DNA of 64,000 nucleotides from Leucoraja ocellata (Eukaryota), in NCBI GenBank assembly GCA_036785375.1, contig JAWMAR010000028.1, positions 10,044,001 through 10,108,000 of the forward strand, written 5' to 3'. Shown here one piece after another: positions 6,872 to 60,603 of this stretch (position 1 is the first letter of the stretch; each line of letters begins with the position of its first letter). The notes under the pieces are model-generated. The model was given only the letters and a program-made list of their open reading frames with translations, ran no database searches and was not told the DNA's origin. Position numbers and translations under genes: made by a program.

Positions 6872-8560
6872 GTATATTCAAAGACGACCTCCATGCCTGT
6901 CTAGGGCAGAAAATTCCAAAGATTCACAACATTCTGAGAGCTAAAATCTCTCCTTATCTCACACGTACTTGTCTGACCCACTATTCCTGGCTGGTGATCC
7001 GGGGAATAATCTTCAGTGTGGAAATAAACACTATCCAACTAGTCTAAATAAACACAAAGACCTCAAAACGACTCTACTCCTCAAATGTTTCCACTCTGTT
7101 GTACTTTGTTGTATAATTGCATTATCAAATCATTATTTTATTTTCTGTTTCCTCCTCCCATACTCTTTTTTTAAATCATTGGTGATATCTTATATACATG
7201 GCCTTTGACCTATATGTGTCAGTAACTCATTTTAAATGATAAGAATTTTAAAGACAGTCATTTCGGTCTAATTGATATTCTATATCACAATTTCTTTGGG
7301 ATACCAGGTTCCCAAGAGGTTGTGCAGCTCGTATAGTTTATTTTTGCTGCAGCTCAAAAGTGTTTGTTAAATCAAAGTTGCTCTCCATATATTAAATTTC
7401 ATAAACGTAGAAGATTTAGAAAGCTAAATTCTAAACAAATAAACTTGTCACATTTACAGTAAGTGCTTTGACTGAACCTATAGAGTAACATTACTGTGAT
7501 TATATTTAAATCTCAGACCATCAGGATTCACAGACTATCATGAGAAAGAGCTCAGATAATTATACAGTTTATTAAAACCCGCAACATTAGTCAATATAAT
7601 CAGTAGTACAAGTGTCCACACAAGTTCTCAGATATTCACTCGCTTTTAGAACCAGCCAAATCATTCATTCTAGACATGCAATCTTTCCTGGACTGACAGC
7701 ATTGCAAAATGTACTGGAACTGGACTTTGTTTAAAATGATTGCAAGTGTCACTGAAATTCCTGGTTTTAACGTTGGAAACTTATTATTCTCAAATGTTGA
7801 CAATAGTAAAGTTGACAATATTATATTCTAATTGTGAAAAATCTTTGCTACTATTTTAAATTACTTAATTTGAGAGGTGTATTCAGTCAAAAAATAAATA
7901 CTATTTTAATTAATTTGTTTCGTCTACATTATTGCAGGAAAAATTATTGAAATAACATGTGTGGACAGTAATGCAAATTGAGTTTAACAATAGTTTAGTT
8001 CAATGAGTACAATTCATTTGGTTTGGATTTCCGGTTCCTGCTTCAGAAAACGGAGTCACCGACCAATGGTCCTCAGCTGAGAGTTCAGTACCTAAACCAG
8101 CACACAGTTCCGAGATTCAGCCACAATGGAAGATGTCCCAGTTCAATGTGTTAGGAATTCATTGCAAAAGTGGTTCAAATGTACTGGGAAGAATGCAGAA
8201 CAGTAAGTGTAAAGTGCCTTGCTCCTGGCTCACATATGGCCTCCCATTCCCCACAGGGGAAGGATGGGATCAAGTCCAGCACCATTTTGCATCTGAAAAA
8301 ACTAGATCTGTTTCACTGAAGAATGCTAATAGTTTGAATTGTTCCTGGCACATGGGAGAGAGATATCAAAAATGGATTTGTTTAGGCCAGAGAACTTTTT
8401 GAAGTGAATTGTTTGTGCACTATTTCCTTAGCTAGGTACTATTCCTTGCAGAACGCCAACACATTCAAATTACAGAGTAAAGTGCCCTAAGTTTGTCTAC
8501 TGTACACTTTTTAGATAGCAGCTGTTGGTAATGTTTTGAATCGTGTTATAACCCAACACC

Positions 8561-8566
8561 TTTATT
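8561..8566 (-). terminator. Candidate polyadenylation signal of copy A
   Basis: AATAAA about 90 nt after the stop codon; also present in copy C (49486-49491); more distal signals exist. Confidence 0.4.
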
Positions 8567-8656
8567 TCCCAACTCCCTGCCCCTAGCAGCACAGTCCCAG
8601 AGATTGATCGGTGCTAGAAGTGTGAATGTCCATTCCTTCGATCCTTTGTTTACACT

Positions 8657-8826
8657 TCACAGTATCTCTCCTGCTATTTTGTAAGATTTTATCAAGTTGC
8701 TTCTGCGAAAGGCATAAAACAGAGCAGAACATATCAGTCCTGCTGATACAAGTGCGGCTCCTATACACACTGCTTCCAGAACACCCGCAGGATTCTCGGC
8801 AGGAGTTGCGATATCAGGTATTTTTT
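8657..8826 (-). CDS. VCAM1: VCAM1-like copy A, terminal exon: stalk, transmembrane segment, cytoplasmic tail
   Basis: ttgcAG acceptor, phase 1; EKIPDIATPAENPAGVLEAVCIGAALVSAGLICSALFYAFRRSNLIKSYKIAGEIL*; tail resembles human IYFARKANMKGSYSL; this frame is not in the supplied ORF track. Confidence 0.88.
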
Positions 8827-8906
8827 CTGCAAATAGACAGAAGAATATTTTTTAAAACAATATCAGTAAAATACATTCTCCACACAACAATTCTCAATCT
8901 ATACTT

Positions 8907-9466
8907 TTTTTTTCACTTAAAGTTTTATTGATTTTTCAGTGATATATACAAACCAGTGCAACACCACCATAAATAAAACAAAATAAGAAAAACAGCAATC
9001 AAAATTAAAAAATAAGTAGATAGGGGGAAAAAAAAAGTGAATAAATAAAAAATTGGAATAAGACCGTGTGGTTCACTTACCAAATAAAAAAAGAAAATAC
9101 ATTACATTGATTAGTTATCTGGAGATAATTCAATATTCATACAAACATACCATCTAGTTATATATAACACAATCTTCCCATATCTAGCTCGGCATTTATC
9201 TAATTGGTGTCATGGCTCAAATAAATGGTCCATTTTCCCCAGATCTTCTCTAAAGAATTCTCCTTGACTCTCAAGGAATATGTCAATTTCTCCATATTAA
9301 AGATATCTCGCACAATTTCTAACCACTGTTCCTGTTTTGGACTTTTTTCATTAAGCCACTGCCTGGTAATGGCCTTCTTACTTGCTGCAAGCAAAACTTT
9401 AATCAAATATGTATCTTCTATTTTTTACAATATCTTCAATACGCCCCAGATACTTCACAGGGCAGG
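8907..9466 (-). mobile_element. 5'-truncated L1/Tx1 insertion in the last intron of copy A, sense orientation
   Basis: ORF 9200-9406 is an L1-type C-terminus; AATAAA at 8929-8924 followed by an A-run; 13-bp TSD TCAATCTATACTT (8894-8906, 9467-9479); absent from copy C. Confidence 0.88.
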
Positions 9467-9487
9467 TCAATCTATACTTAAACTTAC

Positions 9488-9743
9488 CGATAACTTGTAT
9501 TTCCACAAATCCTGTCTGTTTCCCAAGTTTATTAATCGCTTTGACCTTACAAAGCCCAGCATCACTTGGTGTATTTTTCATGGATTGTAAAGTTATCGTT
9601 ACTGAAGGACAGCACATTTTCACTTTTGTTCACTAGTTTCTTCCAGGTGAAATTGGCTAAGTGGATGTTATGAATGGTGCAGCCAATGGTGACCTTTTCT
9701 CCTTCATCGACCAGTTTGGAAGGATGAGCCCAAACAGTGAGGT
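9488..9743 (-). pseudogene. Frameshifted extra Ig exon of copy A
   Basis: 256 bp between AG and GTAAGT; DLTVWAHPSKLVDEGEKVTIGC...NFTIHEKYTK* (stop 9564-9562); Ig homology continues in another frame (TPSDAGLCKVKAINKLG); F-strand Cys missing. Confidence 0.8.
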
Positions 9744-10469
9744 CTGGTGATGAGGGGGAAAATACATGTCCATTGACTCTATACATCTACCTGATCTATA
9801 CATATCATTATGTCTATTAATGATTGTTACAATCATAGATTATTGCAATGTATAATAATCACCATGACTTGTCAGCTCAAGTTTCTGTTCAAGGAATTAG
9901 GCACAAAAAGCTAGAAAGTCTCTCCAGTCCTGTGCCAAAGGATGGCAGCAGTTAGTTACACTTTCACATACGTTGTTAAATTAAAACCCCCTCTAGTTGA
10001 CATAAAAGATTTTGTAACACAATTTTAAATTTAAAGTGCCAGAGTTCTGCCCAGTTTATTCCTGCATCCTGGTCAATATTTATCACTAAACCAACATCAG
10101 TCTGAAGAAGGATCCCAACTTGAAACGTTACCCATCCATGTTCTCCAGGGATGTTACCTGACACACTGAGTTACTCCAGAACTTTGTGTCTTGTTGTTGT
10201 TGTAAATCAGCATATACAATTTGTTTTTCTTCATCATTACAACTAATTGGTTTTCCTCACATTGCTCTTTGTGAGAATGTGCTGCACCACATTTCGTTGC
10301 TTCACATGTCAAAGGCACTTTATTGGTGATAAAGTGTTTGCGTAGTCCTGAATGGTATGAATGTTCCCCCATAAATCCACATCATTCTTTCCCCCCCCTC
10401 GTAATAATTCAAGTGAAAATACTTTTCACATTCAGTTCCTGTAAATTTCTCATTAATTTCCTTACAAAC

Positions 10470-10733
10470 CTTGAACCTGGAGTTTGGTGATGTTGATCTG
10501 CTTCCCCAGAGCATTAGTGGCCTCACATTGATACAGCCCTGCATCAGCTGGCTGGACATCACGGATTGTCAATGTCCCATTCTCAGAGTCTAGCTCGCTC
10601 CATCCGCTCGATGACTGCCTCCTCAGTACAAGGTGGGCAGGGGGGTTGGACTGGGTTGTGCAGCTGAACGTGACCCTGTCTCCTTCCTTCACAGTAGAGG
10701 GGGTGATGGAGAGAGTGGTGTCCCTGGGGCTAC
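10470..10733 (-). CDS. VCAM1: VCAM1-like copy A exon 6, Ig domain (D7-like, repeat 2)
   Basis: 264 bp, AG/GT, phase 1-1; VKEGDRVTFSC...DAGLYQCEATNALG resembles human D7 VKEGDTVIISC...DAGVYECESKNKVG. Confidence 0.88.
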
Positions 10734-10938
10734 CTGAAACCAGAGGCGTGAGAAATTAATGAATTGCAAAATGTTTAGACAAATCCGTGCGAAAAAACAG
10801 TCATAAAATGATACAGTGTTGAAACACGTCTTTCGGCTCAACTTGCCCAAACCAGCCATCATGTCCCAGCTACACTAGTCCTGCCCGCCCGTGTTTGGCC
10901 CATGTCCCTCCAAACCTATCCTATCCATGTACCTGTCT

Positions 10939-11766
10939 AAGGTACACAGGAATGCTGGAGAAACTCAGCGGGTGCAGCAGCATCTATGGAGCGAAGGAGA
11001 TAGGCAACGTTTTGGGCCGAAACACTTCTTCAGACTGATAGGGGGTGGGGGAAGGCGGGGAGAAGAAAGGAAAAAGGAGGAGGGGCCCGAGGGCTGAGGG
11101 AGAGATAGGAAGGGGAGGAGACAGCAAGGGTTAACAGAATTGTGAGAATTCAATGTTCATGCCCCCAGGATGCAGACTCCCCAAGGGGAATATGAGGTGC
11201 TGTTCCTCCAATTTCCAGTGTTGCTCACTCTGGCCGTGGAGGAGGCCCAGGTCAGAGAGGTCGGATACGGAATGGGAGGGGGAATTGAAGTGCTGAGCCA
11301 CCGTGAGGTCAGGTTGGTTAGTGCGGACCGAGCGGAGGTCTTCGGCAAAACGATCGCCAAGCCTACGCTTGGTCTCACCAATATAGATCAGCTGACATCT
11401 AGAGCATTTGGAGGAGGTGCAGGTGAACCTCTGTCGCACCTGGAACGACTGCTTGGGTCCTTGAATGGAGTCAAGGGGGGAGGTAAAGCGACCAGTGTGT
11501 CGCATCTCTTGCGGTTGCAAGGGAAAGTACCTGGGGAAGGGGTGGAGCGGGAGGGAAGGGAAGAATTGACAAGGGAGTTACGGAGGGAGCAGTCTTTGTG
11601 GAAGGCAGACGGGGGGGGGGGGGGGGGGGGGAGATGGGAAGATGTGGCGAGTGGTGGGGTCACATTGGAGGTGGCGAAACTGACGGAGGACTATTTGTTG
11701 TATGTGCCAGCTAGTGGGGTGAAAGGTGAGGACCAGGGGGACTCTGCCCTTATTGCGAGTGGGGGG
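10939..11766 (-). mobile_element. Penelope-like element fragment (GIY-YIG region + terminal repeat)
   Basis: CSRCQLIYIGETKRRLGDRF motif; 13-bp flanking duplication CATGTACCTGTCT; same insertion at the equivalent site in copy C. Confidence 0.85.
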
Positions 11767-11934
11767 CATGTACCTGTCTCTTAAATGTTGGGATAGTCCC
11801 AGCCTCAACTACCATGGATGGTATGAATGTTCCCCCATAAATCCAAATCATTCTTGTCCCCCCTCGTAAGAATTTAAGTGAAAATACTTTTCACATTCAG
11901 TTCCTGTAAATTTCTCATTAAGTTCCACACAAAC

Positions 11935-12198
11935 CTTGAACCTGGAGTTTGGTGATGTTGATCTGCTTCCCCAGAGCATTAGTGGCCTCACATTGATACA
12001 GCCCTGCATCAGCTGGCTGGACATCACGGATTGTCAATGTCCCATTCTCAGAGTCTAGCTTGCTCCATCCGCTCGATGACTGCCTCCTCAGTACAAGCTG
12101 GGCAGCGGGGTTGGACTGGGTTGTGCAACTGAACGTGACCCTGTCTCCTTCCTTCACAGCAGAGGGGGTGATGGAGAGAGTGGTGTCCCTGGGGCTAC
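11935..12198 (-). CDS. VCAM1: VCAM1-like copy A exon 5, Ig domain (D7-like, repeat 1)
   Basis: 264 bp, AG/GT, phase 1-1; GSPRDTTLSITPSAVKEGDRVTFSC...KLQVQ. Confidence 0.88.
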
Positions 12199-12792
12199 CT
12201 GAGACCAGAGGCGTGAGAAATTAATAAATTGCAAAATGTTGAGCCAAATCCGTGCAAAGAAACATAATCATAGTCATAAAGTGATATAGTGTGGAAACAG
12301 GCCCTTCGGCCCAACTTGCCCAAACCAGCTACACTCGTCCCACCCGCCCGCATTTGTTCCATGTCCCTCCAAACCTGTCCTATCCATGTACACGTCTGAC
12401 TGTTTCTTAAATGTTGGGATCGTCCCTGCCTCAGCTACCTCCTCTAGCAGCTTGTTCCATACACCCACCAACCTTTGTGTGAAAAAGTTACCCCTCAGAA
12501 TCCTACTAAATCTTTTCCCCTTCACCATAAACCTATGTCTGGTCATTGATGCACCCACTATGGGCAAAAGACTCTGTGCCCAATCTATTTCTCTCCTGAT
12601 TTATACACCTCTATAAGATCATCCCTCACCTGCGTTCCAAGGAATAGAGTCCCAGCCTGCCCAACCTCTCCCTATAGCTCAGACCCTTTAGCCCTAGTGA
12701 CATCCTGGTAAATCTTCTCTCAACCCTTTCCAGCTTGACCACGTCTTTCCTATAACAATGATAGTAAAATTACAATAGTGAAACAAACGCAC

Positions 12793-13059
12793 CTTGAACG
12801 TGGAATTCCACCTCCTTGGTGATTGTCCCCAGTTTATTGCCGGCTTCACAGCGGTACATTCCCGTGTCCCCGAACAGGGCCGGTGACAGGTGCAGAATCG
12901 CTCGGTCCTCGGCCACGACTGACCAGTTGCCGGCAGATAACTTGCTCCACACTATCGTGGCAGCGGGGCTGCTGTCTGCAGCACAGGTTAGTCGAACATC
13001 CTGACCCTCTCTCACTGTGGCAGAGGGCTCTGCAGTAATATCAATCCATGTGGGAGCAT
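12793..13059 (-). CDS. VCAM1: VCAM1-like copy A exon 4, Ig D3
   Basis: 267 bp, phase 1-1; IVWSKLSAGN...DTGMYRCEAGNKLGTITKEVEFHVQ vs human D3 IFWSKKLDNGN...[25 protein letters not shown]. Confidence 0.92.
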
Positions 13060-13177
13060 CTGTAGAAGGAGATGGGATAATTCACTACATTAAAGGCGGG
13101 CGACTTAAACCATTGTCCAGACTACGTCTATGACTGTGATTCCGTTCTCAATGTTATATCTCTGTCTCCATACTTAC

Positions 13178-13480
13178 AGTGAACCTGTAACGTTAGCGAC
13201 CCCTCGGCCTTGCGTGGTTGGTTCTCCGTGAGTAATTGCACTCGGCATGTCAGCTCTTGTCCCGAGTCTCGCAATTCAGCCGTCAGTTCGTAGGTGAAGT
13301 TCATCGCCGTTTCTTCCTCTGTGTAGTCACGGAAGCTGTCGGTCTTCAGCAATGTTGTTCCTTTCAGCCACTCCACCTCCACTTGAGCGGGGTAGACTTT
13401 GGGGACCGTACATCTCACGGAGCCTCTCTGGCCAACTTCCAGACTGCCCACAGTCTCCACGATGAGTGTGTCGGACAGAG
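13178..13480 (-). CDS. VCAM1: VCAM1-like copy A exon 3, Ig D2
   Basis: 303 bp, phase 1-1; GSLEVGQRGSVRCTVPKVYP...WLKGTTLLK...ELTCRVQL...LQVH vs human D2 GPLEAGKPITVKCSVADVYP...LLKGDHLMK. Confidence 0.92.
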
Positions 13481-16207: not shown

Positions 16208-16218
16208 TTAATACTCAC

Positions 16219-16494
16219 AGAATATATTGAGGTTGGCATATTTTCTTTTTTCTTCTGTGCCGCATTTTGCGGAACAAGTGTACTTGTGTTGGTTCTGCGG
16301 GGTCACCGCGGAGATGGTGAACTTGGACACCGAGCCCCGAGTTGTGATTGTTCCGCCCAGGGGGTTATCGGTCCCGATTCTCCACGTGAAGGTCGGAGAC
16401 GAGCAGCTCTTCGCCTCACAGTTCAACTCCAGCGAGTCCCCGATACGAGCCCACACGTTTCTAGACGGGTTTAACTCCAAATTGAAGGCGGATC
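16219..16494 (-). CDS. VCAM1: VCAM1-like copy A exon 2, Ig D1 (integrin-binding domain)
   Basis: 276 bp; ARIGDSLELNCEAKSCSSPTFTWRIGTDNPLGG...YTCSAKC vs human [33 protein letters not shown]...YLCTATC; four-Cys pattern. Confidence 0.95.
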
Positions 16495-16683: not shown

Positions 16684-16744
16684 CTGTGGCGAGCATCAAT
16701 GCAAGAGTAATTGTAGTGGCTGGGTCGCATCTGTCTCCAGCCAT
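16684..16744 (-). CDS. VCAM1: VCAM1-like copy A exon 1, signal peptide
   Basis: Kozak ACCATGG; MAGDRCDPATTITLALMLAT(G); phase-1 GT donor fits exon 2 (GSA|F cleavage). Confidence 0.88.
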
Positions 16745-16789
16745 GGTTCAGCGGCACTCGGACACACACACACACACACAAGCCGAGGT

Positions 16790-16962
16790 TGACTTCACTT
16801 CTGCAAGGGGCGTCAGGCTCTGGAGCTGTGAGCCTGGGCTCCGCCGCCCCGCTTTATAACCCCGTCTGGAAGAGCATGGGACTTCCCTTGGCGTCAGGCG
16901 AGCAATCCCCACCACGCACCGTTCACTGGCTCCTGATCTTTCTCTGCTGAAGGGAATTTACC
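16790..16962 (-). promoter_or_regulatory. Copy A promoter: TATA box, NF-kB site(s), GC box, IRF-like motif
   Basis: TATAAA 16858-16853; GGGACTTCCC 16878-16887; kB-like GGGAATTTACC 16952-16962; AGAAGTGAAGT downstream of TATA. Confidence 0.72.
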
Positions 16963-28690: not shown

Positions 28691-28691
28691 T

Positions 28692-28826
28692 GGTGTATTT
28701 TTCAAGGATTGTAAAGCTGTTGTTACTGAAGGACAGCACATTTTCACTGTTGTTCACTACTTTCTTCCAGGTGAAATTGGCTGAGGGGATGTTATGAATG
28801 GTGCAGCCAATGGTGACCTTTTCTCG
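28692..28826 (-). pseudogene. Remnant of the frameshifted Ig exon in copy B
   Basis: EKVTIGCTIHNIPSANFTWKK...NNSFTILEKYT; homologous to about 9567-9700; both ends lost. Confidence 0.85.
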
Positions 28827-29928: not shown

Positions 29929-29934
29929 TCTCTG

Positions 29935-30339: not shown

Positions 30340-31020
30340 CTTACTTTATGAGCCAAGTATATATTGTAACATACGAGGAATTTTGATTTGCCATACAGTT
30401 ATACAACTAAAAAGCAATAAAAAACACAAAATACATTTTAGCATAAACATCCAGCACAGTGACTCCTCCACATTCCTCACTGTGATGGAAAGCAAAAAAA
30501 AGTTCGATCTCTTCCCTTCTTTGATCTCCAACAGTCAGGTGTCTTTCACCTTCCGTTGACGGGACGATCTTGACTCCCGTAGCCGGCAGCGGGCCCTATG
30601 TGTTGGGGCGATCAAGCTCCTACGTCGGGAGATGTCAGTTCCCCGCGCCGGGCGATCGGACCCCGGGTCGGGGCTAGTCGAACATCGTGTGGTTTTAGAG
30701 CTTCCCGGCTTGGTCTCTCCCGAGGCTGCAAGCCCTTGATGTTAAAGTCCACAGGCTGTGGATTGGAGCATCGATCCCAGGCAAAGGATCAGCTCCGATG
30801 GCAAGTCCACGCCTCCAGCTCCACGATGTTAGGCCGCAGAGTGACCAGAGATACGACCCGGAAAACAATCGCATCTCCAGCAAGATAAGTGATTTCCCCC
30901 GACCCCACTCCCCACATAAACAAACCAGAGAACATTAACACAAATTTTTAAATAATAATAGAAATAACAAAAAAAAGACAAAAGGGGAGACTGTTGGCGA
31001 AGCTGCCATCGCGGCACCAT
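30340..31020 (-). mobile_element. Unclassified interspersed repeat that supplies the candidate C-terminus of copy B
   Basis: Absent downstream of the D7-like exons in copies A and C; GC-rich body and LINE-like 3' end; family not identified. Confidence 0.5.
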
Positions 31021-31134
31021 CCGATATCGAACATTGAACCTGAAGTTTGTTGCTGTTGATCTGCTGGGTTGTGCAGTTGAATGTGACCCCGTCTCCTTCC
31101 TTCACATCGGAGAGAGTGGTGTCCCTGGGGCTAC
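30935..31134 (-). CDS. VCAM1: VCAM1-like copy B, candidate terminal exon (internally deleted D7-like exon reading into a hydrophobic, GPI-signal-like tail)
   Basis: Intact acceptor ctctgttctcAG; open in phase 1: GSPRDTTLSDVKEGDGVTFNCTTQQINSNKLQVQCSISDGAAMAASPTVSPFVFFLLFLLLFKNLC*; native donor degraded. Confidence 0.45.
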
Positions 31135-33037: not shown

Positions 33038-33068
<31 letters not shown>

Positions 33069-34680: not shown

Positions 34681-34947
34681 CTTGAACGTGGATTTCCACC
34701 TCCTTGGTGATTGTCCCCAGTTTATTGCCAGCTTCACAGCGGTACATTCCCGTGTCCCCGAACAGGGCCGGTGACAGGTGCAGAATCGCTCGGTCCTCGG
34801 CCACGACTGACCAGTTGCCGGCGGATAACTTGCTCCACACTATCGTGGCAGCGGGGCTGCTGTCTGCAGCACAGGTTAGCCGAACATCCTGACCCTCTCT
34901 CACTGTGGCAGAGGGCTCTGCAGTAATGTCAATCCCCGTGGGAGCAT
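34681..34947 (-). CDS. VCAM1: VCAM1-like copy B exon 4, Ig D3
   Basis: 267 bp, AG/GT intact, near-identical to copy A. Confidence 0.85.
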
Positions 34948-35065: not shown

Positions 35066-35368
35066 AGTGAACCTGTAACGTTAGCGACCCCTCGGCCTTG
35101 CGTGGTTGGTTCCCCGTGAGTAATTGCACTCGGCATGTCAGCTCTTGTCCCGAGTCTCGCAATTCAGCCGTCAGTTCGTAGGTGAAGTTCATCGCCGTTT
35201 CTTCCTCTGTGTAGTCACGGAAGCTGTCGGTCTTCAGCAATGTTGTTCCTTTCAGCCACTCCACCTCCACTTGAGCGGGGTAGACTTTGGGGACCGTACA
35301 TCTCACGGAGCCTCTCTGGCCAACTTCCAGGCTGCCCACAGTCTCCACGATGAGCGTGTCGGACAGAG
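35066..35368 (-). CDS. VCAM1: VCAM1-like copy B exon 3, Ig D2
   Basis: 303 bp, strong polypyrimidine acceptor, GTAAGT donor. Confidence 0.85.
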
Positions 35369-36453: not shown

Positions 36454-36729
36454 AGAATATATTGAGGTTGGCATATGTTCGTTTTTCTTCTGTGCCGCAT
36501 TTTGCGGAACAAGTGTACTTGTGTTGGTTCTGCGGGGTAACCGCGGAGATGGTGAATGTGGACACCGAGCCCCGAGTTGTGATTGTTCCGCCCAGGGGGT
36601 TATCGGTCCCGATTCTCCACGTGAAGGTTGGAGACGAGCAGCTCTTCGCCACACAGATCAACTGCAGCGAGTCCCCGATACGAGCCCACACGTTTCTAGA
36701 CGGGTTTAACTCCAACTTGAAGGCGGATC
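36454..36729 (-). CDS. VCAM1: VCAM1-like copy B exon 2, Ig D1
   Basis: 276 bp, open, TDNPL motif and four Cys intact. Confidence 0.87.
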
Positions 36730-36917: not shown

Positions 36918-36978
36918 CTGTGGCGAGCATCAATGCAAGAGTAATTGTAGCGGCTGGGTCGCATCTGTCTCCAGCCAT
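36918..36978 (-). CDS. VCAM1: VCAM1-like copy B exon 1, signal peptide
   Basis: MAGDRCDPAATITLALMLAT(G), phase-1 donor. Confidence 0.82.
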
Positions 36979-46550: not shown

Positions 46551-47211
46551 TCTATCGGAAGGTAAAGCCAATTATTGTCTACTCTCAGTATTTTTGGTAT
46601 TGTGGTCCAAGGTACACCTAGTCTGCTCCATCAGATAGACCACATTGTACAGAAGCCTGACAATACACTCTCAAAACAGAATCTCAATTCTAAGCTCCAT
46701 CATAGTAAGAGACACTGAGTTACACAAAGGTTCAGGGATAGTTTTCAAACGTGCTTGAAAGGATGTCACATTTCCACTGATTTCTGGGAATACCTGGTCC
46801 ATTAGTGCTCAAGGTGGAGGGGATTCCAGATGATCATATAATCCTTCAGCCCATGTGTTGGGAGCTTCTAGGAGCCCAACATAAATGATGGATAGAGCAC
46901 ATCACCTCTGACACTACACACTCGCTGGTCCCATTGATCCAGAGTTGCTGCCTGATCCAGGGTTGGTGTCAATTCCTTTAAATGCACTCTGACCCATAGG
47001 TACATTTACGTTAATCTCTCCAACACCCCATTCTATTCTTATCAATATGTCACAGATCGTCACTGTGATCGTTACCATGCTGAAACCTCACTACAGGATA
47101 CTAGACTTGGTTTAGAGGTTTATTATTACTATCCTAATAGCCAGCTCTTCTACCTCCTATAGAGGCCTAAGTTGCCATGAGATTCGACCCACTGTTTCTT
47201 ACTTCGTTTTT

Positions 47212-49581: not shown

Positions 49582-49748
49582 TCACAGTATCTCTCCTGCT
49601 ATATTGTAAGATTTTGTCAAGCTTCTGCGAAAGGCATAAAACAGAGCAGAACATATCAGTCCTGCTGATGCAAATGTGGCTCCTGCGCATAATGTTTCCA
49701 GAACACCCGGAGGAATCTCGGCAGGAGTTGTGATATCAGTTATTTTTT
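49582..49748 (-). CDS. VCAM1: VCAM1-like copy C terminal exon (TM + cytoplasmic tail)
   Basis: EKITDITTPAEIPPGVLETLCAGATFASAGLICSALFYAFRRSLTKSYNIAGEIL*; good acceptor. Confidence 0.86.
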
Positions 49749-51275: not shown

Positions 51276-51539
51276 CTTGAACCTGGAGTTTGGTGATGTT
51301 GATCTGCTTCCCCAGAGCATTAGTGGCCTCACATTGATACAGCCCTGCATCAGCTGGCTGGACATCATGGATTGTCAATGTCCCATTCTCAGAGTCTAGC
51401 TCGCTCCATCCACTCGATGACTGCCTCTTCAGTACAAGGTGGGCAGAGGGGTTGGACTGGGTTGTGCAGCTGAACGTGATATTGTCTCCTTCCTTCACAG
51501 CAGAGGGGGTGATGGAGAGAGTGGTGTCCCTGGGGCTAC
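51276..51539 (-). CDS. VCAM1: VCAM1-like copy C, D7-like exon repeat e
   Basis: 264 bp, AG/GT, open; extra NIT sequon. Confidence 0.8.
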
Positions 51540-51990: not shown

Positions 51991-52069
51991 ATGTTATGAA
52001 TGGTGCAGCCAATGGTGACCTTTTCTCCTTCATCGACCAGTTTGAAAGGGTGAGCCCAAACAGTCAGGT
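51991..52069 (-). pseudogene. 5' half of the frameshifted Ig exon in copy C
   Basis: DLTVWAHPFKLVDEGEKVTIGCTIHNI. Confidence 0.85.
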
Positions 52070-52317
52070 CTGGTGATGAGAGAGAAAATACATGTCCAAT
52101 GACTTTGTGCATCTACCTGATCTATACATCTCATGATGTCTATTAATGATTGTTACAATCATGGATTATTGCAATGTCCAATAATCACCATGACTTGTGA
52201 GCTCAAGTTACTGTTCAAGGAATTAGGCACAAAAAGCTCCAGCTTTGTGTCTTGTTGTTGTTGTAAATCAGCATATACAATTTATTTTTCTACATCATTA
52301 CAACTAATTGGATTTCA

Positions 52318-52544
52318 TCACATTGCTCTTTGGGAGAATTGATACCAACCTGCATCAGCTGGCTGGACATCACGGATTGTCAATGTCCCATTCTCAGAGT
52401 CTAGCTTGCTCCATCCACTCGATGACTGCCTCCTCAGTACAAGCTGGGCAGGGGGGTTGGACTGGGTTGTGCAGCTGATCATGACCCTGTCTCCTTCCTT
52501 CACAGCAGAGGGGGTGATGGAGAGAGTGGTGTCCCTGGGGCTAC
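52318..52544 (-). pseudogene. Copy C D7-like repeat d, 3'-deleted (acceptor intact, donor and second Cys lost, in-frame stop)
   Basis: ...DVQPADAGWYQFSQRAM*; deletion junction near 52340. Confidence 0.82.
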
Positions 52545-53628: not shown

Positions 53629-53892
53629 CTTGAACCTGGAGTTTGGTGATGTTGATCTGCTTCCCCAGAGCATTAGTGGCCTCACATTGATACAGCCCTG
53701 CATCAGCTGGCTGGACATCACGGATTGTCAATGTCCCATTCTCAGAGTCTATCTTGATCCATCCGCTCGATGACTGCCTCCTCAGTATAAGGTGGGCAGG
53801 GGGGTTGGACTGGGTTGTGCAGCTGAACGTGACCCTGTCTCCTTCCTTCACAGCAGAGGGAGTGATGGAGAGAGTGGTGTCCCTGGGGCTAC
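53629..53892 (-). CDS. VCAM1: VCAM1-like copy C, D7-like exon repeat c
   Basis: 264 bp, AG/GT, open. Confidence 0.85.
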
Positions 53893-54979: not shown

Positions 54980-55243
54980 CTTGAACCTGGAGTTTGGTGA
55001 TGTTGATCTGCTTCCCAAGAGCATTAGTGGCCTCACATTGATACAGCCCTGCATCAGCTGGCTGGACATCACGGATTGTCAATGTCCCATTCTCAGACTC
55101 TAGCTCGCTCCATCCGCTCGATGACTGCCTCCTCAGTACAAGGTGGGCAGGGGGGTTGGACTGGGTTGTGCAGCTGAACGTGACCCTGTCTCCTTCCTTC
55201 ACAGCAGAGGGGGTGATGGAGAGAGTGGTGTCCCTGGGGCTAC
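54980..55243 (-). CDS. VCAM1: VCAM1-like copy C, D7-like exon repeat b
   Basis: 264 bp, AG/GT, open. Confidence 0.85.
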
Positions 55244-55447
55244 CTGAAACCAGAGGCGTGAGAAATTAATGAATTGCAAAATGTTTAGACAAACCGTGCG
55301 AAAAAACTGTCATAAAATGATACAGTGTTGAAACACGTCTTTCGGCTCAACTTGCCCGAAGCAGCCATCATGTCCCAGCTACACTAGTCCCGCCCGCCCG
55401 TGTTTGGCCCATGTCCCTCCAAACCTATCCTATCCATGTACCTGTCT

Positions 55448-56263
55448 AAGGTACACAGGAATGCTGGAGAAACTCAGCGGGTGCAGCAGCATCTATGGAG
55501 CGAAGGAGATAGGCAACGTTTCAGGCCGAAACCCTTCTTCAGACTGATAGGGGGTGGGGGAAGGCGGGGAGAAGAAAGGAAAAAGGAGGAGGGGCCCGAG
55601 GGCTGAGGGAGAGATAGGAAGGGGAGGAGACAGCAAGGGTTAACAGAATTGTGAGAATTCAATGTTCATGCCACCAGGATGCAGACTCCCCAAGGGGAAT
55701 ATGAGGTGCTGTTCCTCCAAATTCCAGTGTTGCTCACTCTGGCCGTGGAGGAGGCCCAGGACAGAGAGGTCGGATACAGAATGGGAGGGGGAATTGAAGT
55801 GCTGAGCCACCGTGAGGTCAGGTTGGTTAGTGCGAACCGAGCGGAGGTGTTCGTCAAAACGATCGCCAAGCCTACGCTTGGTCTCACCAATATAGATCAG
55901 CTGACATCTAGAGCATTTGGAGGAGGTGCAGGTGAACCTCTGTCGCACCTGGAACGACTGCTTGGGTCCTTGAATGGAGTCAAGGGGGGAGGTAAAGCGA
56001 CAAGTGTAGCATCTCTTGCGGTTGCAAGGGAAAGTACCTGGGGAATGGGGGGAGTGGGGGGAAGGGAAGAATTGACAAGGGAGTTACGGAGGGAGCAGTC
56101 TTTGCGGAAGGCAGACAGGAGGAGATGGGAAGATGTGGCGAGTGGTGGGGTCACGTTGGAGGTGGCGAAACTGACGGAGGACTATTTGTTGTATGTGCCA
56201 GCTAGTGGGGTGAAAGGTGAGGACCAGGGGGACTCTGCCCTTATTGCGAGTGGGGGGGGGGGG
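55448..56263 (-). mobile_element. Penelope-like fragment (paralogous to 10939-11766)
   Basis: YIGETKRRLGDRF; same flanking duplication CATGTACCTGTC. Confidence 0.85.
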
Positions 56264-56431
56264 CATGTACCTGTCCCTTAAATGTTGGGATAGTCCCAGC
56301 CTCAACTACCATGGATGGTATGAATGTTCCCCCATAAATCCAAATCATTCTTGTCCCCCCTTGTAATAATTTAAGTGAAAATACTTTTCACATTCAGTTC
56401 CTGTAAATTTCTCATTAATTTCCACACAAAC

Positions 56432-56695
56432 CTTGAACCTGGAGTTTGGTGATGTTGATCTGCTTCCCCAGAGCATTAGTGGCCTCACATTGATACAGCC
56501 CTGCATCAGCTGGCTGGACATCACGGATTGTCAATGTCCCATTCTCAGAGTCTAGCTCGCTCCATCCGCTCGATGACTGCCTCCTCATTACAAGGTGGGC
56601 AGAGGGGTTGGACTGGGTTGTGCAGCTGAACGTGACCCTGTCTCCTTCCTTCACAGCAGAGGGGGTGATGGAGAGAGTGGTGTCCCTGGGGCTAC
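56432..56695 (-). CDS. VCAM1: VCAM1-like copy C, D7-like exon repeat a
   Basis: 264 bp, AG/GT, open. Confidence 0.85.
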
Positions 56696-57450
56696 CTGAA
56701 ACCAGAGGCGTGAGAAATTAACGAATTGCAAAAAGTTTAGACAAACCGTGCGAAAAAACAGTCATAAAATGATACAGTGTTGAAACACATCTTTCGGCTC
56801 AACTTGCCCAAACCAGCCATCATGTCCCAGCTACACTAGTCCCGCCAGAGGCGTGAGAAATTAATGAATTGCAAAAAGTTGAGCCAAATCCGTGCAAAGA
56901 AACATAGTCATAATCATAAAGTGATATAGTGTGGAAACAGGCCCTTCGGCCCAAATTGCCCACACCAGCCATCATTTCCCAGCTACACTCGTCCCACCTG
57001 CCCGCATTTGGTCCATACCCCTCCAAACCTGTCCTATCCATGTACCTGTCTAACTGTCTTAAATGTTGGGATCGTCCCTGCCTCAACTACCTCCTCTAGC
57101 AGCTTGTTCCATACACCCACCAACCTTTGTGTGAAAAAGTTACCCCTCAGATTCCTACTAAATCTTTTCCCCTTCACCATAAACCTATGTCTGGTCATCG
57201 ATGCACCCACTATGGTCAAAAGACCCTGTGCATCCGCCCAATCTATTCCTCTCCTGATTTATACACCTCTATAAGATCATCCCTCACCTGCTCTCCAAGG
57301 AATAGAGTCCCAGCCTGCCCAACCTCTCCCTATAGCTCAGACCCTTTAGCTCTAGTGACATCCTGGTAAATCTTCTCTCAACCCTTTCCAGCTTGACCAC
57401 GTCTTTCCTATAACAATGATAGTAAAATTACAATAGTGAAACAAACGCAC

Positions 57451-57717
57451 CTTGAACGTGGAATTCCACCTCCTTGGTGATTGTCCCCAGTTTATTGCCG
57501 GCTTCACAGCGGTACATTCCCGTGTCCCCGAACAGGGCCGGTGACAGGTGCAGAATCGCTCGGTCCTCGGCCACGACTGACCAGTTGCCGGCGGATAACT
57601 TGCTCCACACTATCGTGGCAGCGGGGCTGCTGTCTGCAGCACAGGTTAGCCGAACATCCTGACCCTCTCTCACTGTGGCAGAGGGCTCTGCAGTAATATC
57701 AATCCCCGTGGGAGCAT
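57451..57717 (-). CDS. VCAM1: VCAM1-like copy C exon 4, Ig D3
   Basis: 267 bp, AG/GT, open. Confidence 0.92.
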
Positions 57718-57835
57718 CTGTAGAAGGAGATGGGATAATTCACTACATTAAAGGCGGGCGACTTAAACCATTGTCCAGACTACGTCTATGACTGTGATTC
57801 CGTTCTCAATGTTATATCTCTGTCTCCATACTTAC

Positions 57836-58138
57836 AGCGAACCTGTAACGTTAGCGACCCCTCAGCCTTGCGTGGTTGGTTCCCCGTGAGTAATTGCACT
57901 CGGCATGTCAGCTCTTGTCCCGAGTCTCGCAATTCAGCCGTCAGTTCGTAGGTGAAGTTCATCGCCGTTTCTTCCTCTGTGTAGTCACGGAAGCTGTCAG
58001 TCTTCAGCAATGTTGTTCCTTTCAGCCACTCCACCTCCACTTGAGCGGGGTAGACTTTGGGGACCGTACATCTCACGGAGCCTCTCTGGCCAACTTCCAG
58101 GCTGCCCACAGTCTCCACGATGAGTGTGTCGGACAGAG
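57836..58138 (-). CDS. VCAM1: VCAM1-like copy C exon 3, Ig D2
   Basis: 303 bp, AG/GTAAGT, open. Confidence 0.92.
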
Positions 58139-58668
58139 CTGCAACGACACGTGGATTCAGGAATCAAACAGGGATTCAGGGTGGAATGTACAGCACCCAA
58201 GTTGCCCATCGATTTAGTCAGAGGGTGGTGAATCTGCAGAATTCATTGCCACAGAAGGCTGTGGAGGCCAAGGCAATGGATATATTTAAGGCAGAAATAG
58301 GCAGATTCTTGATTAGTACGGGTGTCAGAGGTTATGGGAGAAGGCAGGAGAATGGGGTTAAGAAGGAGAGATGGATCAGCCATGAGTGAATGGTGGAGTA
58401 GACTCGATGGGCCGTATGGGTGAATTCTGCTCCTGTTATTTATGAACATGATTTGTTACCAAACTCTCATTCGATCAGCAAAAGGACAACTTTCATGTCA
58501 GAAAACATTCATGAATCTGTTAACTAAAATATTTGTTGAAGACCAAAACAAAGACAATCGTTGGAAGGCCCTGAATAAAACAGCGTGTGCCGGAAATACT
58601 CATCTGGCAGGCAGTATTGGTTAAGAAAACAGAGGAAAAACTGCTCTCTGCAGACGCTGTGCTACAAC

Positions 58669-59423
58669 ATAGAAACATAGAAACATAGAAATTAGGTGCA
58701 GGAGTAGGCCATTCGGCCCTTCGAGCCTGCACCGCCATTCAATATGATCATGGCTGATCATCCAACTCAGTATCCCGTACCTGCCTTCTCTCCATACCCC
58801 CTGATCCCCTTAGCCACAAGGGCCACATCTAACTCCCTCTTAAATATAGCCAATGAACTGGCCTCAACTACCCTCTGTGGCAGAGAGTTCCAGAGATTCA
58901 CCACTCTCTGCGTGAAAAAAAGTTCTTCTCATCTCGGTTTTAAAGGATTTCCCCTTTATCCTTAAGCTGTGACCCCTTGTCCTGGACTTCCCCAACATCG
59001 GGAACAATCTTCCTGCATCTAGCCTGTCCAACCCCTTAAGAATTTTGTAAGTTTCTATAAGATCCCCTCTCAATCTTCTAAATTCTAGAGAGTATAAACC
59101 AAGTCTATCCAGTCTTTCTTCATAAGACAGTCCTGACATCCCAGGAATCAGTCTGGTGAACCGTCTCTGCACTCCCTCTATGGCAATAATGTCCTTCCTC
59201 AGATTTGGAGACCAAAACTGTACGCAATACTCCAGGTGTGGTCTCACCAAGACCCTGTACAACTGCAGTAGAACCTCTCTGCTCCTATACTCAAATCCTT
59301 TTGCAATGAAAGCTAACATACCATTCGCTTTCTTTACTGCCTGCTGCACCTGCATGCCTACCTTCAATGACTGGTGTACCATGACACCCAGGTCTCGCTG
59401 CATCTCCCCCTTTCCCAATCAGC
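58669..59423 (-). mobile_element. Young 5'-truncated CR1 insertion specific to copy C intron 2
   Basis: ORF 58864-59418; (TTCTATGT)n tail; empty site GCTACAAC|GAGTG in copy A. Confidence 0.92.
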
Positions 59424-59684
59424 CAACGAGTGAAATCTCCCCAGAACAATGACCTTTCAGTGGAACAGCAGATGCTGGTTTAAACCGAAGATAGACACAA
59501 AAAGCTGGAGTAACTCAGCAGGACAGGCAGCATCTCTGAGAAAGAAGGAACGGTCGAGATTCTGTTTCTCTCTTCGTGGAGGCTGCACGAATAATTGAGT
59601 GTTTCCAGTATTTTTTTTTTTAACTTTTATGTGGCCGGACAAAGTTGCAACAAGTTTACAGTCGGGAGATGGGTTAATACTCAC

Positions 59685-59960
59685 AGAATATATTGAGTTT
59701 GGCATATGTTCGTTTTACATCTGCGCCGCATTTTGCGGAACAAGTGTACTTGTGTTGGTTCTGCGGGGTAACCGCGGAGATGGTGAACTTGGACACCGAG
59801 CCCCGAGTTGTGATTGTTCCGCCCAGGGGGTTATCGGTCCCGATTCTCCACGTGAAGGTCGGAGACGAGCAGCTCTTCGCCTCACAGTTCAACTCCAGCG
59901 AGTCCCCGATACGAGCCCACACGTCTCTAGACGGGTTTAACTCCAAATTGAAGGCGGATC
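59685..59960 (-). CDS. VCAM1: VCAM1-like copy C exon 2, Ig D1
   Basis: 276 bp, TDNPL motif, four Cys. Confidence 0.94.
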
Positions 59961-60149
59961 CTGCAGTTTTGAAACATTACAAAAGCAATATTATTTTTTA
60001 AAAGCTTATAAGTTTAACGCTTTAAATATTCACCTCTTTATTACTATAAACAAACAGATACCGAAATTGATACTTTGGTGCCTGATATTTATCACAAAAC
60101 GAATCCGAAGAAAATGCAGATTATTAGTGGTGTAAAATAAATGAGAAAC

Positions 60150-60210
60150 CTGTGGCGAGCATCAATGCAAGAGTAATTGTAGCGGCTGGGTCGCATCTGT
60201 CTCCAGCCAT
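60150..60210 (-). CDS. VCAM1: VCAM1-like copy C exon 1, signal peptide
   Basis: MAGDRCDPAATITLALMLAT(G), Kozak ACCATGG. Confidence 0.88.
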
Positions 60211-60254
60211 GGTTCAGCGGCACTCGGACACACACACACACACACAAGCCGAGG

Positions 60255-60430
60255 TTGACTTCACTTCTGCAAGGGGCGTCAGGCTCTGGAGCTGTGAGCC
60301 TGGGCTCCGCCGCCCCGCTTTATAACCCTGTCTGGAAGAGCAGGGAACTTCCCTTGGCTTCAGGCGAGCAATCCCCACCACGCACCGTTCACTGGCTCCT
60401 GGTCTTTCTCTGCTGAAGGGAATTTACCAC
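60255..60430 (-). promoter_or_regulatory. Copy C promoter (TATA, NF-kB)
   Basis: TATAAA 60324-60319; GGGAACTTCCC 60343-60353; GGGAATTTACC near 60418. Confidence 0.7.
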
Positions 60431-60603
60431 AAAGGGCATCGCAGTTTAAATAAACACAAGTTTCCCAATTCCATATCTTGCAGATCATAACCAGACACTT
60501 ATGGAAGCGCAGAATCACGTAATCTTTTTAACATGCATTTTACGCACGAACAAGAGCCACTCGGCCCATTGAGTTCGTGCCAGCACATTCATTTGGGCCC
60601 CAC

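What the first reader, a model, noticed from the sequence alone, without database searches (positions are those of the whole stretch)
6873..60603. Three-gene VCAM1-like cluster whose members differ in Ig number and membrane anchor (5-Ig TM, 3-Ig without TM, 7-Ig TM)
Seen: three same-strand copies share promoter, signal exon and D1-D3 at very high identity but diverge after D3. Known: mammalian VCAM1 is single-copy and gets length and anchor variants from alternative splicing. Inference: here duplication plus exon copy-number change may hard-wire a family of integrin ligands with different reach and anchoring. Copy-specific TE insertions argue that these are true paralogs rather than assembly duplicates.
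Basis: partly seen in the sequence, partly recalled or inferred. Interest (0 to 1): 0.88.

Follow-up and report, generated by a model that had tools for sequence, protein, structure and literature searches.

The report
Three VCAM1 gene copies in skate
A skate-like genome carries three side-by-side copies of the blood-vessel adhesion gene VCAM1 that differ in length and in how they end, and one ends in a greasy tail supplied by inserted DNA.

Summary
The genes lie on the minus strand. Three head-to-tail copies (C 60210-49582, B 36978-30935, A 16744-8657) share a TATA promoter, a signal exon and intact D1-D3 Ig exons, then diverge.

- **Copy A:** D1-D3, two repeat (R) Ig exons and a TM/tail exon, about 534 codons.
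- **Copy C:** D1-D3, four intact R exons, one truncated R exon and a TM exon, about 709 codons.
- **Copy B:** D1-D3, then a deleted R-exon stub whose donor was destroyed by a roughly 700-bp insertion. It reads on to a stop through a short hydrophobic tail (368 codons) and has no TM exon.

D1 and D2 match human VCAM1 D1 and D2 best among solved structures. 25 of the 30 nearest protein clusters I looked up are named VCAM1.

Two unnamed public proteins of 368 and 249 aa, on contigs of 1225 and 999 nt, have exactly the copy-B splice form. Copy B is therefore transcribed in some skate.

Not shown: expression of A and C, the anchor chemistry (a GPI anchor is inferred), integrin binding, and read depth.

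Amblyraja radiata already has an annotated 511-aa VCAM1-like gene and a 17-Ig relative. First-reader notes record VCAM1-like copies on other pieces of this genome; I did not check them. I class this as a new variant of a known kind.

The parts
16853..16887 (-). Copy A core promoter: kB-consensus match (16878-16887) about 20 bp upstream of TATAAA (16853-16858). The same arrangement occurs in B (37110-37119; TATAAA 37085-37090) and C (60344-60353; TATAAA 60319-60324).
   Evidence: The position is conserved by homology. kB matches are not enriched in the window (13 found, 20.8 expected).
16684..16744 (-). Copy A signal-peptide exon (ATG to phase-1 GT donor)
16219..16494 (-). Copy A D1 exon (VCAM1-type, four Cys, Asp-containing C-D loop motif)
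13178..13480 (-). Copy A D2 exon
12793..13059 (-). Copy A D3 exon (I-set)
11935..12198 (-). Copy A repeat Ig exon R1
10470..10733 (-). Copy A repeat Ig exon R2
9488..9743 (-). Copy A membrane-proximal Ig pseudo-exon. It is 256 nt, not a multiple of 3, and has an in-frame TGA. It is homologous to the last Ig domain of shark VCAM1.
8657..8826 (-). Copy A stalk/TM/cytoplasmic exon, including the stop
36918..36978 (-). Copy B signal exon
36454..36729 (-). Copy B D1 exon
35066..35368 (-). Copy B D2 exon
34681..34947 (-). Copy B D3 exon
30935..31134 (-). Copy B terminal exon. It is an R-exon stub with internal deletions that reads into a roughly 700-bp insertion (30327-31029). It gives 65 codons ending in a 12-residue hydrophobic stretch plus 4 residues and a stop.
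   Evidence: (P0176 98.5%, P0178 97% over 66 aa)
28691..28825 (-). Copy B remnant of the membrane-proximal pseudo-exon. The homology to A ends here and no TM exon follows.
60150..60210 (-). Copy C signal exon
59685..59960 (-). Copy C D1 exon
57836..58138 (-). Copy C D2 exon
57451..57717 (-). Copy C D3 exon
56432..56695 (-). Copy C R1 exon
54980..55243 (-). Copy C R2 exon
53629..53892 (-). Copy C R3 exon
52338..52544 (-). Copy C truncated R exon (R4t). It has lost its 3' end. A phase-compatible GT after exon base 52350 would give a 195-nt in-frame partial exon.
   Evidence: A. radiata P0173 ends an R domain at the same point.
51276..51539 (-). Copy C R5 exon. It lies inside a roughly 2-kb insertion (50010-51990) that splits the pseudo-exon into 51991-52069 and 49832-50009.
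49582..49748 (-). Copy C stalk/TM/cytoplasmic exon, including the stop
46734..46793 (-). Possible alternative terminal exon downstream of copy C. The 20 aa are identical to the C-terminus of A. radiata XP_032885016.1 and contain no TM.

Best explanation
This is a tandem, head-to-tail cluster of three true paralogs of the cartilaginous-fish VCAM1 gene, on the minus strand of a skate-like genome.

All three copies keep a TATA promoter, a signal exon and an N-terminal D1-D2-D3 unit with the conserved Asp-containing loop. They differ in what follows.

- **Copy A** is the ordinary ray/skate form: D1-D3, two R Ig exons and a TM/short tail, with the frameshifted membrane-proximal Ig exon skipped.
- **Copy C** grew by local duplication of the 1.35-kb R unit to four intact R exons plus one broken one. 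It keeps a TM exon, although that exon is drifting.
- **Copy B** lost most of its one R exon by deletion. It lost that exon's donor to a roughly 700-bp insertion, and everything downstream to rearrangement. Splicing from D3 into the stub now reads into the insertion and gives a 368-residue protein that ends in a short hydrophobic tail.

I infer that B's tail is more likely a GPI-attachment signal than a membrane span.

Shown: the gene structures, the VCAM1 kinship, gene conversion over D2-D3, and the existence of copy-B-type spliced RNA.

Inferred: expression of A and C, GPI anchoring, integrin binding, and any division of labour between the copies.
For: **Structure.** Three colinear blocks. 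The exons are intact, with AG/GT sites in phase 1-1. TM exons are found only in A and C.

**Paralogy rather than artefact.** Non-exonic identity in the promoter-D1 block is 90.3-94.6%. The whole D2-D3 block, including its intron, is 98.3-98.8% identical in all pairs, which is a gene-conversion tract. Reverse-transcriptase insertions are copy-specific. The window has no N.

**VCAM1 identity.**
- D1 aligns end to end with human VCAM1 D1 (64.8 bits, E 5e-17). No MAdCAM or ICAM chain appears at E<=1.
- D2 is best matched by VCAM1 D2 (E 1.8e-6), against ICAM-5 at 0.0066.
- 25 of the 30 hit clusters I looked up are named VCAM1 or VCAM1-like, and none is named MAdCAM or ICAM.
- The A. radiata proxy P0001 sits in a 7-row chondrichthyan VCAM1 clade with SH-aLRT 95.
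- The four D1 cysteines and the loop Asp are at least 90% conserved across 28 VCAM1 proteins.

**Copy B is used.** P0176 (368 aa, on a 1225-nt contig) and P0178 (249 aa, on a 999-nt contig) join D3 to the stub and tail. They match 31135-30938 at 98.5% and 97%. Contigs that short cannot hold the roughly 6 kb of introns.

**Selection.** D2 and D3 have pN/pS of 0.11-0.22 in all pairs, including those with B.

**Precedent.** Mouse makes a 3-domain GPI-linked VCAM-1 by splicing (PMC2193422, Introduction passage).

**Relatives.** A. radiata has a 511-aa VCAM1-like protein and a 1554-aa protein with 3+14 Ig domains on one 70-Mb record.
Against:
- P0176 and P0178 are not identical to copy B. P0176 differs at 7 of 91 D1 residues. 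They therefore come from another individual or species.
- D1 shows no purifying selection between copies: pN/pS is 0.46, 0.92 and 1.58, on only 8-12 changes.
- R exons differ mostly by non-synonymous changes.
- The TM exons of A and C differ at 13 of 55 aligned positions (12 substitutions and 1 gap) with pN/pS 2.3.
- The A. radiata 17-Ig model ends in a non-TM exon that is also present downstream of C.
- The GPI reading rests only on inspection of the tail; no predictor was available.
- The D1-D2 tree had no MAdCAM or ICAM outgroup.
Confidence: 0.72

Rival explanations
1. Copy B is a decaying partial duplicate. It is still transcribed from its inherited promoter, and its hydrophobic ending is an accident of the inserted DNA. 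It makes no working protein, or only a secreted or degraded one.
For: - The R exon is gutted by deletions, its donor is destroyed, and the TM exon and the rest are lost.
- Copy B's D1 differs from A at 6 of 91 residues and from C at 10 of 91. A and C differ from each other at 6 of 91.
- Conservation of D2-D3 could simply be gene conversion from A or C.
- No NCBI-named protein of 202-644 aa carries the tail.
Against: - A 368-codon frame is open in three different sequences: window copy B, P0176 and P0178. The last 32 residues are identical in all three.
- The promoter, signal exon and all splice sites are kept.
- The transcripts were abundant enough to be assembled: 2+6 member sequences.
Confidence: 0.28
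2. Only copy A is the working membrane VCAM1. Copy C is either a drifting duplicate or mainly a secreted long form that uses the downstream non-TM exon.
For: - pN/pS between the TM exons of C and A is 2.3, on 13 non-synonymous and 2 synonymous differences.
- By inspection of the sequences printed (no tally was computed), A's TM exon looks closer to A. radiata P0173 than C's does. tblastn gave 82% for A's exon, and C's fell under the 75% row filter.
- C carries a broken R exon and a pseudo-exon split by a 2-kb insertion.
- Its promoter homology stops about 390 bp upstream at a C-specific sequence.
- P0001 ends in an exon identical to 46793-46734.
Against: - All 9 coding exons of the 7-Ig TM reading are open and have consensus splice sites.
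- The second half of the TM and the cytoplasmic tail are well kept between A and C.
- The acceptor of the downstream exon has a poor pyrimidine tract.
Confidence: 0.25
3. The three copies are an assembly artefact: haplotypes or collapsed reads laid out in tandem.
For: - Read depth could not be tested.
- First-reader notes record VCAM1-like copies on other pieces of this genome, and some of those could be haplotigs (unchecked).
- D2-D3 is 98-99% identical between the copies.
Against: - Non-coding divergence outside the conversion tract is 5-10%.
- The copies differ in exon content and in insertions.
- The sequence between them is continuous, without N.
- The B-specific exon is seen in independent public RNA assemblies.
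- A. radiata also has at least 2 such genes on one record.
Confidence: 0.04
4. The genes belong to another IgSF family (hemicentin-like, MAdCAM1 or ICAM) and not to VCAM1.
For: - The closest database protein, P0001, is named hemicentin-2-like.
- D3 and R match contactin, titin and other I-set domains best in the PDB.
- D2 also passes the Pfam ICAM1_3_5_D2 cut-off (29.1 bits against 27.5).
Against: - The hemicentin name is an automatic label for a 17-Ig model that starts with the same signal and D1-D3.
- D1 and D2 hit VCAM1 best.
- 25 of 30 looked-up clusters are named VCAM1.
- The PDB holds no VCAM1 D3-D7, so cannot discriminate.
Confidence: 0.04

Closest known systems
Mammalian VCAM1 (human 7-domain and 6-domain forms; mouse 7-domain TM form and 3-domain GPI-linked form)
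   Same: - D1 has four cysteines and an Asp-Pro-Leu-containing C-D loop that aligns with the human motif.
- D2 is of the same type.
- The protein is type I with a short cytoplasmic tail.
- Both long and 3-domain lipid-anchor-type products exist (PMC2193422 Introduction passage; PMC2119261 abstract in the listing).
   Different: - Mammals use one gene and alternative splicing. Here the variants sit in separate genes.
- Mammalian and other bony-vertebrate proteins carry a second D1-D2 unit. The skate genes have a single D1-D3 followed by repeats of one D7-like exon.
- The tail of copy B comes from an insertion, not from a dedicated alternative exon.
Shark and chimaera VCAM1 models (Pristiophorus P0018 709 aa, Rhincodon P0021 524 aa, Stegostoma P0155 527 aa, Callorhinchus P0104 530 aa and P0160 706 aa)
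   Same: The plan is the same: signal, D1, D2, D3, one to three R-type Ig domains, then a TM with a similar tail. They fall in the same clade.
   Different: Sharks keep a membrane-proximal Ig domain. Here it is a frameshifted pseudo-exon. I saw one model per species, so no three-gene cluster is evident from the proteins I looked at.
Amblyraja radiata annotation: XP_032885016.1 'hemicentin-2-like' (1554 aa) and 'VCAM1-like isoform X1' (P0173, 511 aa) on one 70-Mb record
   Same: They have 86-99% identical exons, the same D1-D3 plus R design, variable R number (14, and 1 plus a partial), and the same truncated-R-to-TM junction type as C's R4t.
   Different: - No A. radiata protein of 202-644 aa carries the copy-B tail.
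- The 17-Ig model has no TM.
- The two A. radiata proteins share D2 residues that all three window copies lack. This points to another species or to concerted evolution.
- I could not fetch the locus.
Ray and sawfish VCAM1 models (Pristis P0013 446 aa, Hypanus P0027 580 aa, Narcine P0174 401 aa)
   Same: They lack the membrane-proximal Ig and pass directly from R to TM, as in copy A.
   Different: They have fewer R domains, and no tail of the copy-B kind was seen.

Membership tests
VCAM1 | N-terminal Ig domain with four cysteines (two disulfides) of the VCAM/ICAM/MAdCAM D1 type | tested here: met
   All three D1 exons keep the four Cys. The domain aligns over residues 3-86 with human VCAM1 D1 residues 1-84 at 64.8 bits. 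The four Cys columns are at least 90% conserved in 28 VCAM1 proteins.
VCAM1 | Acidic integrin-binding motif in the C-D loop of D1 | tested here: met
   The Asp and the following Pro-Leu align with the human motif and are identical in A, B and C. The Asp column is at least 90% conserved. The role of the motif is taken from the abstract of PMC2120002. Binding itself was not tested.
VCAM1 | Second domain of the VCAM/ICAM D2 type | tested here: met
   The best PDB match is VCAM1 D2 at E 1.8e-6, with ICAM-5 at 0.0066. Pfam ICAM1_3_5_D2 scores 29.1 bits against a cut-off of 27.5.
VCAM1 | Groups with VCAM1 orthologues rather than MAdCAM1 or ICAMs | tested here: inconclusive
   25 of the 30 clusters I chose from the 150 listed hits are named VCAM1 or VCAM1-like, and none is named MAdCAM or ICAM. 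The proxy P0001 sits in the chondrichthyan VCAM1 clade with SH-aLRT 95. However, the tree had no MAdCAM or ICAM rows, and the window's own exons were not joined for it.
VCAM1 | Type I membrane protein with a single TM and a short cytoplasmic tail | tested here: met
   Met for A (8826-8657) and C (49748-49582). Each has a hydrophobic span followed by a basic, 16- or 15-residue tail like those of shark VCAM1. Not met for B, which has no TM exon.
VCAM1 | Conserved gene neighbourhood of VCAM1 | not testable with these tools
VCAM1 | Binds alpha4 integrins; cytokine-inducible on endothelium | not testable with these tools
   The only hint is a conserved kB-consensus match 20 bp upstream of TATAAA in each copy. 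Such matches are not enriched in the window.
GPI-anchored protein (copy B) | N-terminal signal peptide plus a C-terminal signal: small residues at the cleavage site, a polar spacer, then a 10-20-residue hydrophobic end with no cytoplasmic domain | tested here: inconclusive
   By inspection of the 65-codon terminal exon, a run of small residues (Ser, Asp, Gly, Ala) is followed by a 6-10-residue spacer, 12 hydrophobic residues and 4 final residues. The hydrophobic run is too short for a usual membrane span.
GPI-anchored protein (copy B) | Release from cells by PI-specific phospholipase C | not testable with these tools
   This is a bench test.
Pseudogene (copy B) | Disabling changes in the reading frame, or loss of expression | tested here: not met
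   The signal, D1, D2 and D3 exons are open with intact splice sites. The spliced form is found as RNA-derived contigs. The lost parts (R core, TM exon) change the product but leave an open 368-codon frame.

The most novel reading that the evidence does not exclude
Skates have turned what mouse does by alternative splicing into separate genes. One ancestral VCAM1 became a tandem family in which a transposon-type insertion at an exon's donor site created a new 3-Ig, GPI-anchored adhesion ligand (copy B). Unequal crossing-over of a single Ig exon meanwhile tunes the stalk length of its TM sisters from 5 to 7 Ig, and to 17 Ig in A. radiata. Gene conversion keeps D2-D3 uniform while D1, the integrin-binding domain, is free to diverge. 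This would be a convergent origin, by exonisation, of the short lipid-anchored VCAM1 form.
Probability: 0.3. Interest if true: 0.75.

Novelty: new variant of a known kind. Interest (0 to 1): 0.55.

Why it matters
VCAM1 is a key ligand for leukocyte traffic and for the blood-stem-cell niche. It is treated as a single gene whose forms arise by splicing.

A cartilaginous-fish lineage that fixes short lipid-anchor-like, medium and long forms in separate, separately evolvable genes gives a natural experiment. It could show what stalk length and anchor type do for alpha4-integrin adhesion.

It also shows, step by step in one 54-kb stretch, how IgSF receptors change architecture. The steps are single-exon amplification, an insertion that kills a donor and supplies a new C-terminus, and gene conversion limited to two domains.

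The practical gain is modest. It corrects automatic names such as 'hemicentin-2-like' and points to a transcribed skate gene that carries no source name among the proteins I could see.

Tried and rejected
- **Reads.** I planned to lay polyA RNA reads (X21) and three sets of DNA contigs on copy B (30800-36790). The aim was to test the D3-to-stub junction and the pooled copy number.
- **PDB searches with D3 and R**. These gave only generic I-set relatives (contactin, titin). No VCAM1 D3-D7 structure exists there, so they say nothing on family.
- **My first reading of the pseudo-exon.** I took its missing second Cys as decay. I rejected this because shark VCAM1 proteins also lack that Cys in this domain. 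The frameshift and the stop remain.
- **kB site as evidence of inducibility.** I kept it only as a hint. There are 13 matches in the window against 20.8 expected, and the three promoter matches are one homologous site.
- **Pfam on ten insertion ORFs**. 4 of 10 gave RVT_1. The other 6 gave nothing: 33852-34571, 58867-59418, 11134-11577, 29102-29932, 9203-9424 and 50165-50770. I therefore do not name those elements.
- **Papers.**
  - Full-text searches for VCAM1 with shark and duplication, skate and Leucoraja, cartilaginous fish and paralogs, and vcam1a/vcam1b evolution found no description of a cartilaginous-fish VCAM1 cluster.
  - Subscription papers and all supplements were not seen. Supplements of skate genome papers could list these genes.
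  - PMC46838 is not held.

Full report
**What is in the window.** The 64-kb window has no N. A self-comparison shows three colinear blocks: A about 6915-18049, B about 28258-38582 and C about 47744-60605. Six-frame translation puts every Ig-like open frame of these blocks on the minus strand. The genes therefore run C, B, A, head to tail, in the direction of transcription.

**Shared 5' part.** Each copy has the following.
- A 61-nt signal exon with the same phase-1 GT donor: A 16744-16684, B 36978-36918, C 60210-60150.
- About 390 bp of aligned upstream sequence with TATAAA, and a kB-consensus match 20 bp further upstream. The three kB matches are one homologous site, and such matches are not enriched in the window (13 found, 20.8 expected). 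This is only a hint of inducibility.
- D1 (276 nt), D2 (303 nt) and D3 (267 nt), open in all three with AG/GT sites in phase 1-1.

**Where the copies diverge.**
- **Copy A.**
  - It continues with two intact repeat exons of 264 nt: R1 12198-11935 and R2 10733-10470.
  - Next comes a 256-nt Ig-like exon (9743-9488) with a good acceptor and donor. Its length is not a multiple of three, and it has an in-frame TGA.
  - It ends with a stalk/TM/tail exon (8826-8657).
- **Copy C.**
  - It has four intact R exons: 56695-56432, 55243-54980, 53892-53629 and 51539-51276.
  - It has one R exon cut off at 52338. A phase-compatible GT after base 52350 would make this a 195-nt in-frame partial exon.
  - The same dead Ig exon is split by a roughly 2-kb insertion that itself carries the last R exon.
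  - It ends with a TM exon (49748-49582).
- **Copy B.**
  - The intron after D3 is swollen by reverse-transcriptase-bearing insertions (31528-32727, RVT_1 E 1.7e-28; 33338-33727, E 2.5e-7).
  - Next is an R acceptor at 31134, followed by a stub of the R exon with internal deletions.
  - The last 31 nt of the R exon are recognisable up to 31030. The start of the R intron reappears only at 30326-30302. About 700 bp have therefore been inserted at the donor.
  - Reading from the acceptor gives 65 codons that end in a hydrophobic stretch and a stop at 30935.
  - Further downstream only half of the dead Ig exon remains (28825-28691). No TM exon exists for B anywhere in the window.
- **Lengths.** Summing exon lengths gives 534 codons for A, 709 for C (774 with the partial exon) and 368 for B.

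**Are they real paralogs?**
- Outside a conversion tract the copies are 90.3-94.6% identical in non-exonic sequence (promoter to D1). The 802-bp D2-D3 block is 98.3-98.8% identical in all three pairs, and its non-exonic part is just as similar (97.8-99.6%). That pattern is the signature of gene conversion, not of selection alone.
- The copies carry different insertions. They are separated by satellites and LINE fragments without gaps.
- The B-specific exon is found in independent public data, as described below.
- I could not test read depth.

**What family?**
- Among solved structures, D1 aligns over its whole length with human VCAM1 D1 (64.8 bits, E 5e-17). The higher total for FCRL5 is a sum over several weak domains. 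No MAdCAM or ICAM chain appears at E<=1.
- D2 is best matched by VCAM1 D2 (E 1.8e-6), with ICAM-5 at 0.0066.
- D3 and R are ordinary I-set domains.
- A search of 1.84 billion representatives with D1 alone gave 379 hits at E<=0.001.
- From the 150 hits listed I chose 30 that carry the match in a D1-D2 unit (most of them at the N-terminus) and looked up their clusters. 25 carry VCAM1 or VCAM1-like names. The other 5 comprise 3 hypothetical, 1 'Ig-like domain-containing' and 1 'hemicentin-2-like'. None is named MAdCAM or ICAM.
- I built a quick IQ-TREE tree of 65 D1-D2 units. These were hits covering at least 150 of 193 positions at 40 bits or more. Four near-duplicate proteins were dropped and no outgroup was included. 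The tree puts the skate protein P0001 in a 7-row chondrichthyan VCAM1 clade (SH-aLRT 95), next to the lobe-finned-fish and tetrapod VCAM1 proteins.
- In an alignment of 28 VCAM1 proteins, the four D1 cysteines and the loop Asp are at least 90% conserved. The window's copies have them all, and the loop is identical in A, B and C.

**Relatives.**
- The nearest protein, XP_032885016.1 of Amblyraja radiata (P0001, 92% to D1 of A), is labelled hemicentin-2-like. It is in fact signal, D1-D3 and 14 R domains, with a 20-residue non-TM end. That end is 100% identical to 46793-46734, just downstream of copy C.
- The same 70-Mb record encodes a 511-aa 'VCAM1-like' protein (P0173). It has D1-D3, one R, an R cut at the very point of C's cryptic donor, and a TM exon 82% identical to A's.
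- The two A. radiata proteins share D2 residues that all three window copies lack. The window is therefore from another skate, or the copies evolve in concert within each species.
- Shark and chimaera models keep a membrane-proximal Ig domain that corresponds to the dead exon here. Ray and sawfish models lack it. Skipping that exon is therefore the normal state in this group.

**Copy B is used.**
- Two unnamed proteins from Logan assemblies have signal (P0176 only), D1-D3, the stub and the tail in one frame. P0176 is 368 aa on a 1225-nt contig with 2 member sequences. P0178 is 249 aa on a 999-nt contig with 6 member sequences.
- They match 31135-30938 at 98.5% and 97%. Contigs of that length cannot hold the roughly 6 kb of introns, so they are spliced RNA.
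- They are not identical to the window's B. P0176 differs from it at 7 of 91 D1 residues, but shares its Ile in the 'L-I-C' position. They are therefore another allele or a close species.
- A search limited to the tail found only these two clusters among proteins of 202-644 aa, and no named protein.

**How it most likely works.**
- A and C would be type I membrane ligands whose integrin-binding D1 is held at different distances from the membrane.
- B would present the same D1-D3 on a short unstructured stalk. Its end has a run of small residues, a short polar spacer and 12 hydrophobic residues followed by 4 more. By recalled rules this fits a GPI-attachment signal better than a membrane span. 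That is inference.
- Mouse makes exactly such a 3-domain GPI-linked VCAM-1 by alternative splicing (PMC2193422, Introduction passage). The skate form would be a convergent, gene-encoded version, built from inserted DNA.

**Selection.**
- D2 and D3 show pN/pS of 0.11-0.22 in every pair.
- D1 shows 0.46, 0.92 and 1.58, on only 8-12 changes.
- R exons differ by 3-12 of 264 nt, mostly non-synonymous.
- The TM exons of A and C differ at 13 of 55 aligned positions (12 substitutions and 1 gap), with pN/pS 2.3.
- The binding domain and the stalk/anchor are therefore the parts that diverge. This fits either specialisation or relaxed constraint on one copy.

**Limits.**
- There is no read-level evidence, no locus from another species and no structure model.
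- There is no outgroup in the tree, and no GPI predictor was available.
- I found no paper on a cartilaginous-fish VCAM1 cluster in four full-text searches. Supplements and subscription papers were not seen.
- First-reader notes of this scan mention VCAM1-like copies on other pieces of the same genome and beyond the window's end. I did not check them.

**Verdict.** This is a real VCAM1 paralog cluster with architecture changes. Its most interesting member is the transcribed 3-Ig copy with an insertion-derived hydrophobic end. Public annotation of a related skate already shows multiple VCAM1-like genes with variable R number. I therefore rate it as a new variant of a known kind, with interest 0.55.

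Noticed in passing
window 9488-9743; 28691-28825; 51991-52069 with 49832-50009: A membrane-proximal Ig exon homologous to the last Ig domain of shark VCAM1. Here it is frameshifted with an in-frame TGA in A. It is split by a 2-kb insertion in C and cut off in B. It still has good splice sites in A, so including it would end the frame before the TM exon.
   Followed up: partly
window 52338-52544: The truncated R exon of copy C carries a Leu-to-Trp change that creates CAG|GT in phase. The A. radiata protein P0173 ends an R domain at exactly this point and goes straight to the TM exon. This donor may therefore be used.
   Followed up: partly
window 46734-46793: A short open exon downstream of copy C is 100% identical over 20 aa to the non-TM C-terminus of the 17-Ig A. 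radiata model. It may be an alternative secreted ending or an annotation artefact.
   Followed up: partly
window 12690-13491, 34578-35378, 57348-58149: An 802-bp D2-D3 block is 98.3-98.8% identical among all three copies, intron included. The flanks are 90-95% identical. This is a gene-conversion tract.
   Followed up: yes
window 30327-31029: A roughly 700-bp insertion sits exactly at the donor of copy B's R exon and supplies the new C-terminus and stop. It has no other copy in the window, and I could not name its family.
   Followed up: partly
window 10940-11815, 55449-56312; inverted at 29155-29650: A shared element lies in the R1-R2 intron of A and C, with an inverted, 79-82% identical copy in B. 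Its ORFs gave no Pfam match.
   Followed up: partly
window 18688-19083; 22298-24215; 24583-24789 and 26951-27575; 44804-45248: Four satellite arrays lie between the copies. Their periods are about 17-28, 51, 48 and 14 bp.
   Followed up: no
window 1392-4397; 38970-42204; 58676-59420 and 62623-62966: LINE-type reverse-transcriptase ORFs and fragments flank the cluster and lie inside it. Several are related to each other at 89-94% identity.
   Followed up: partly
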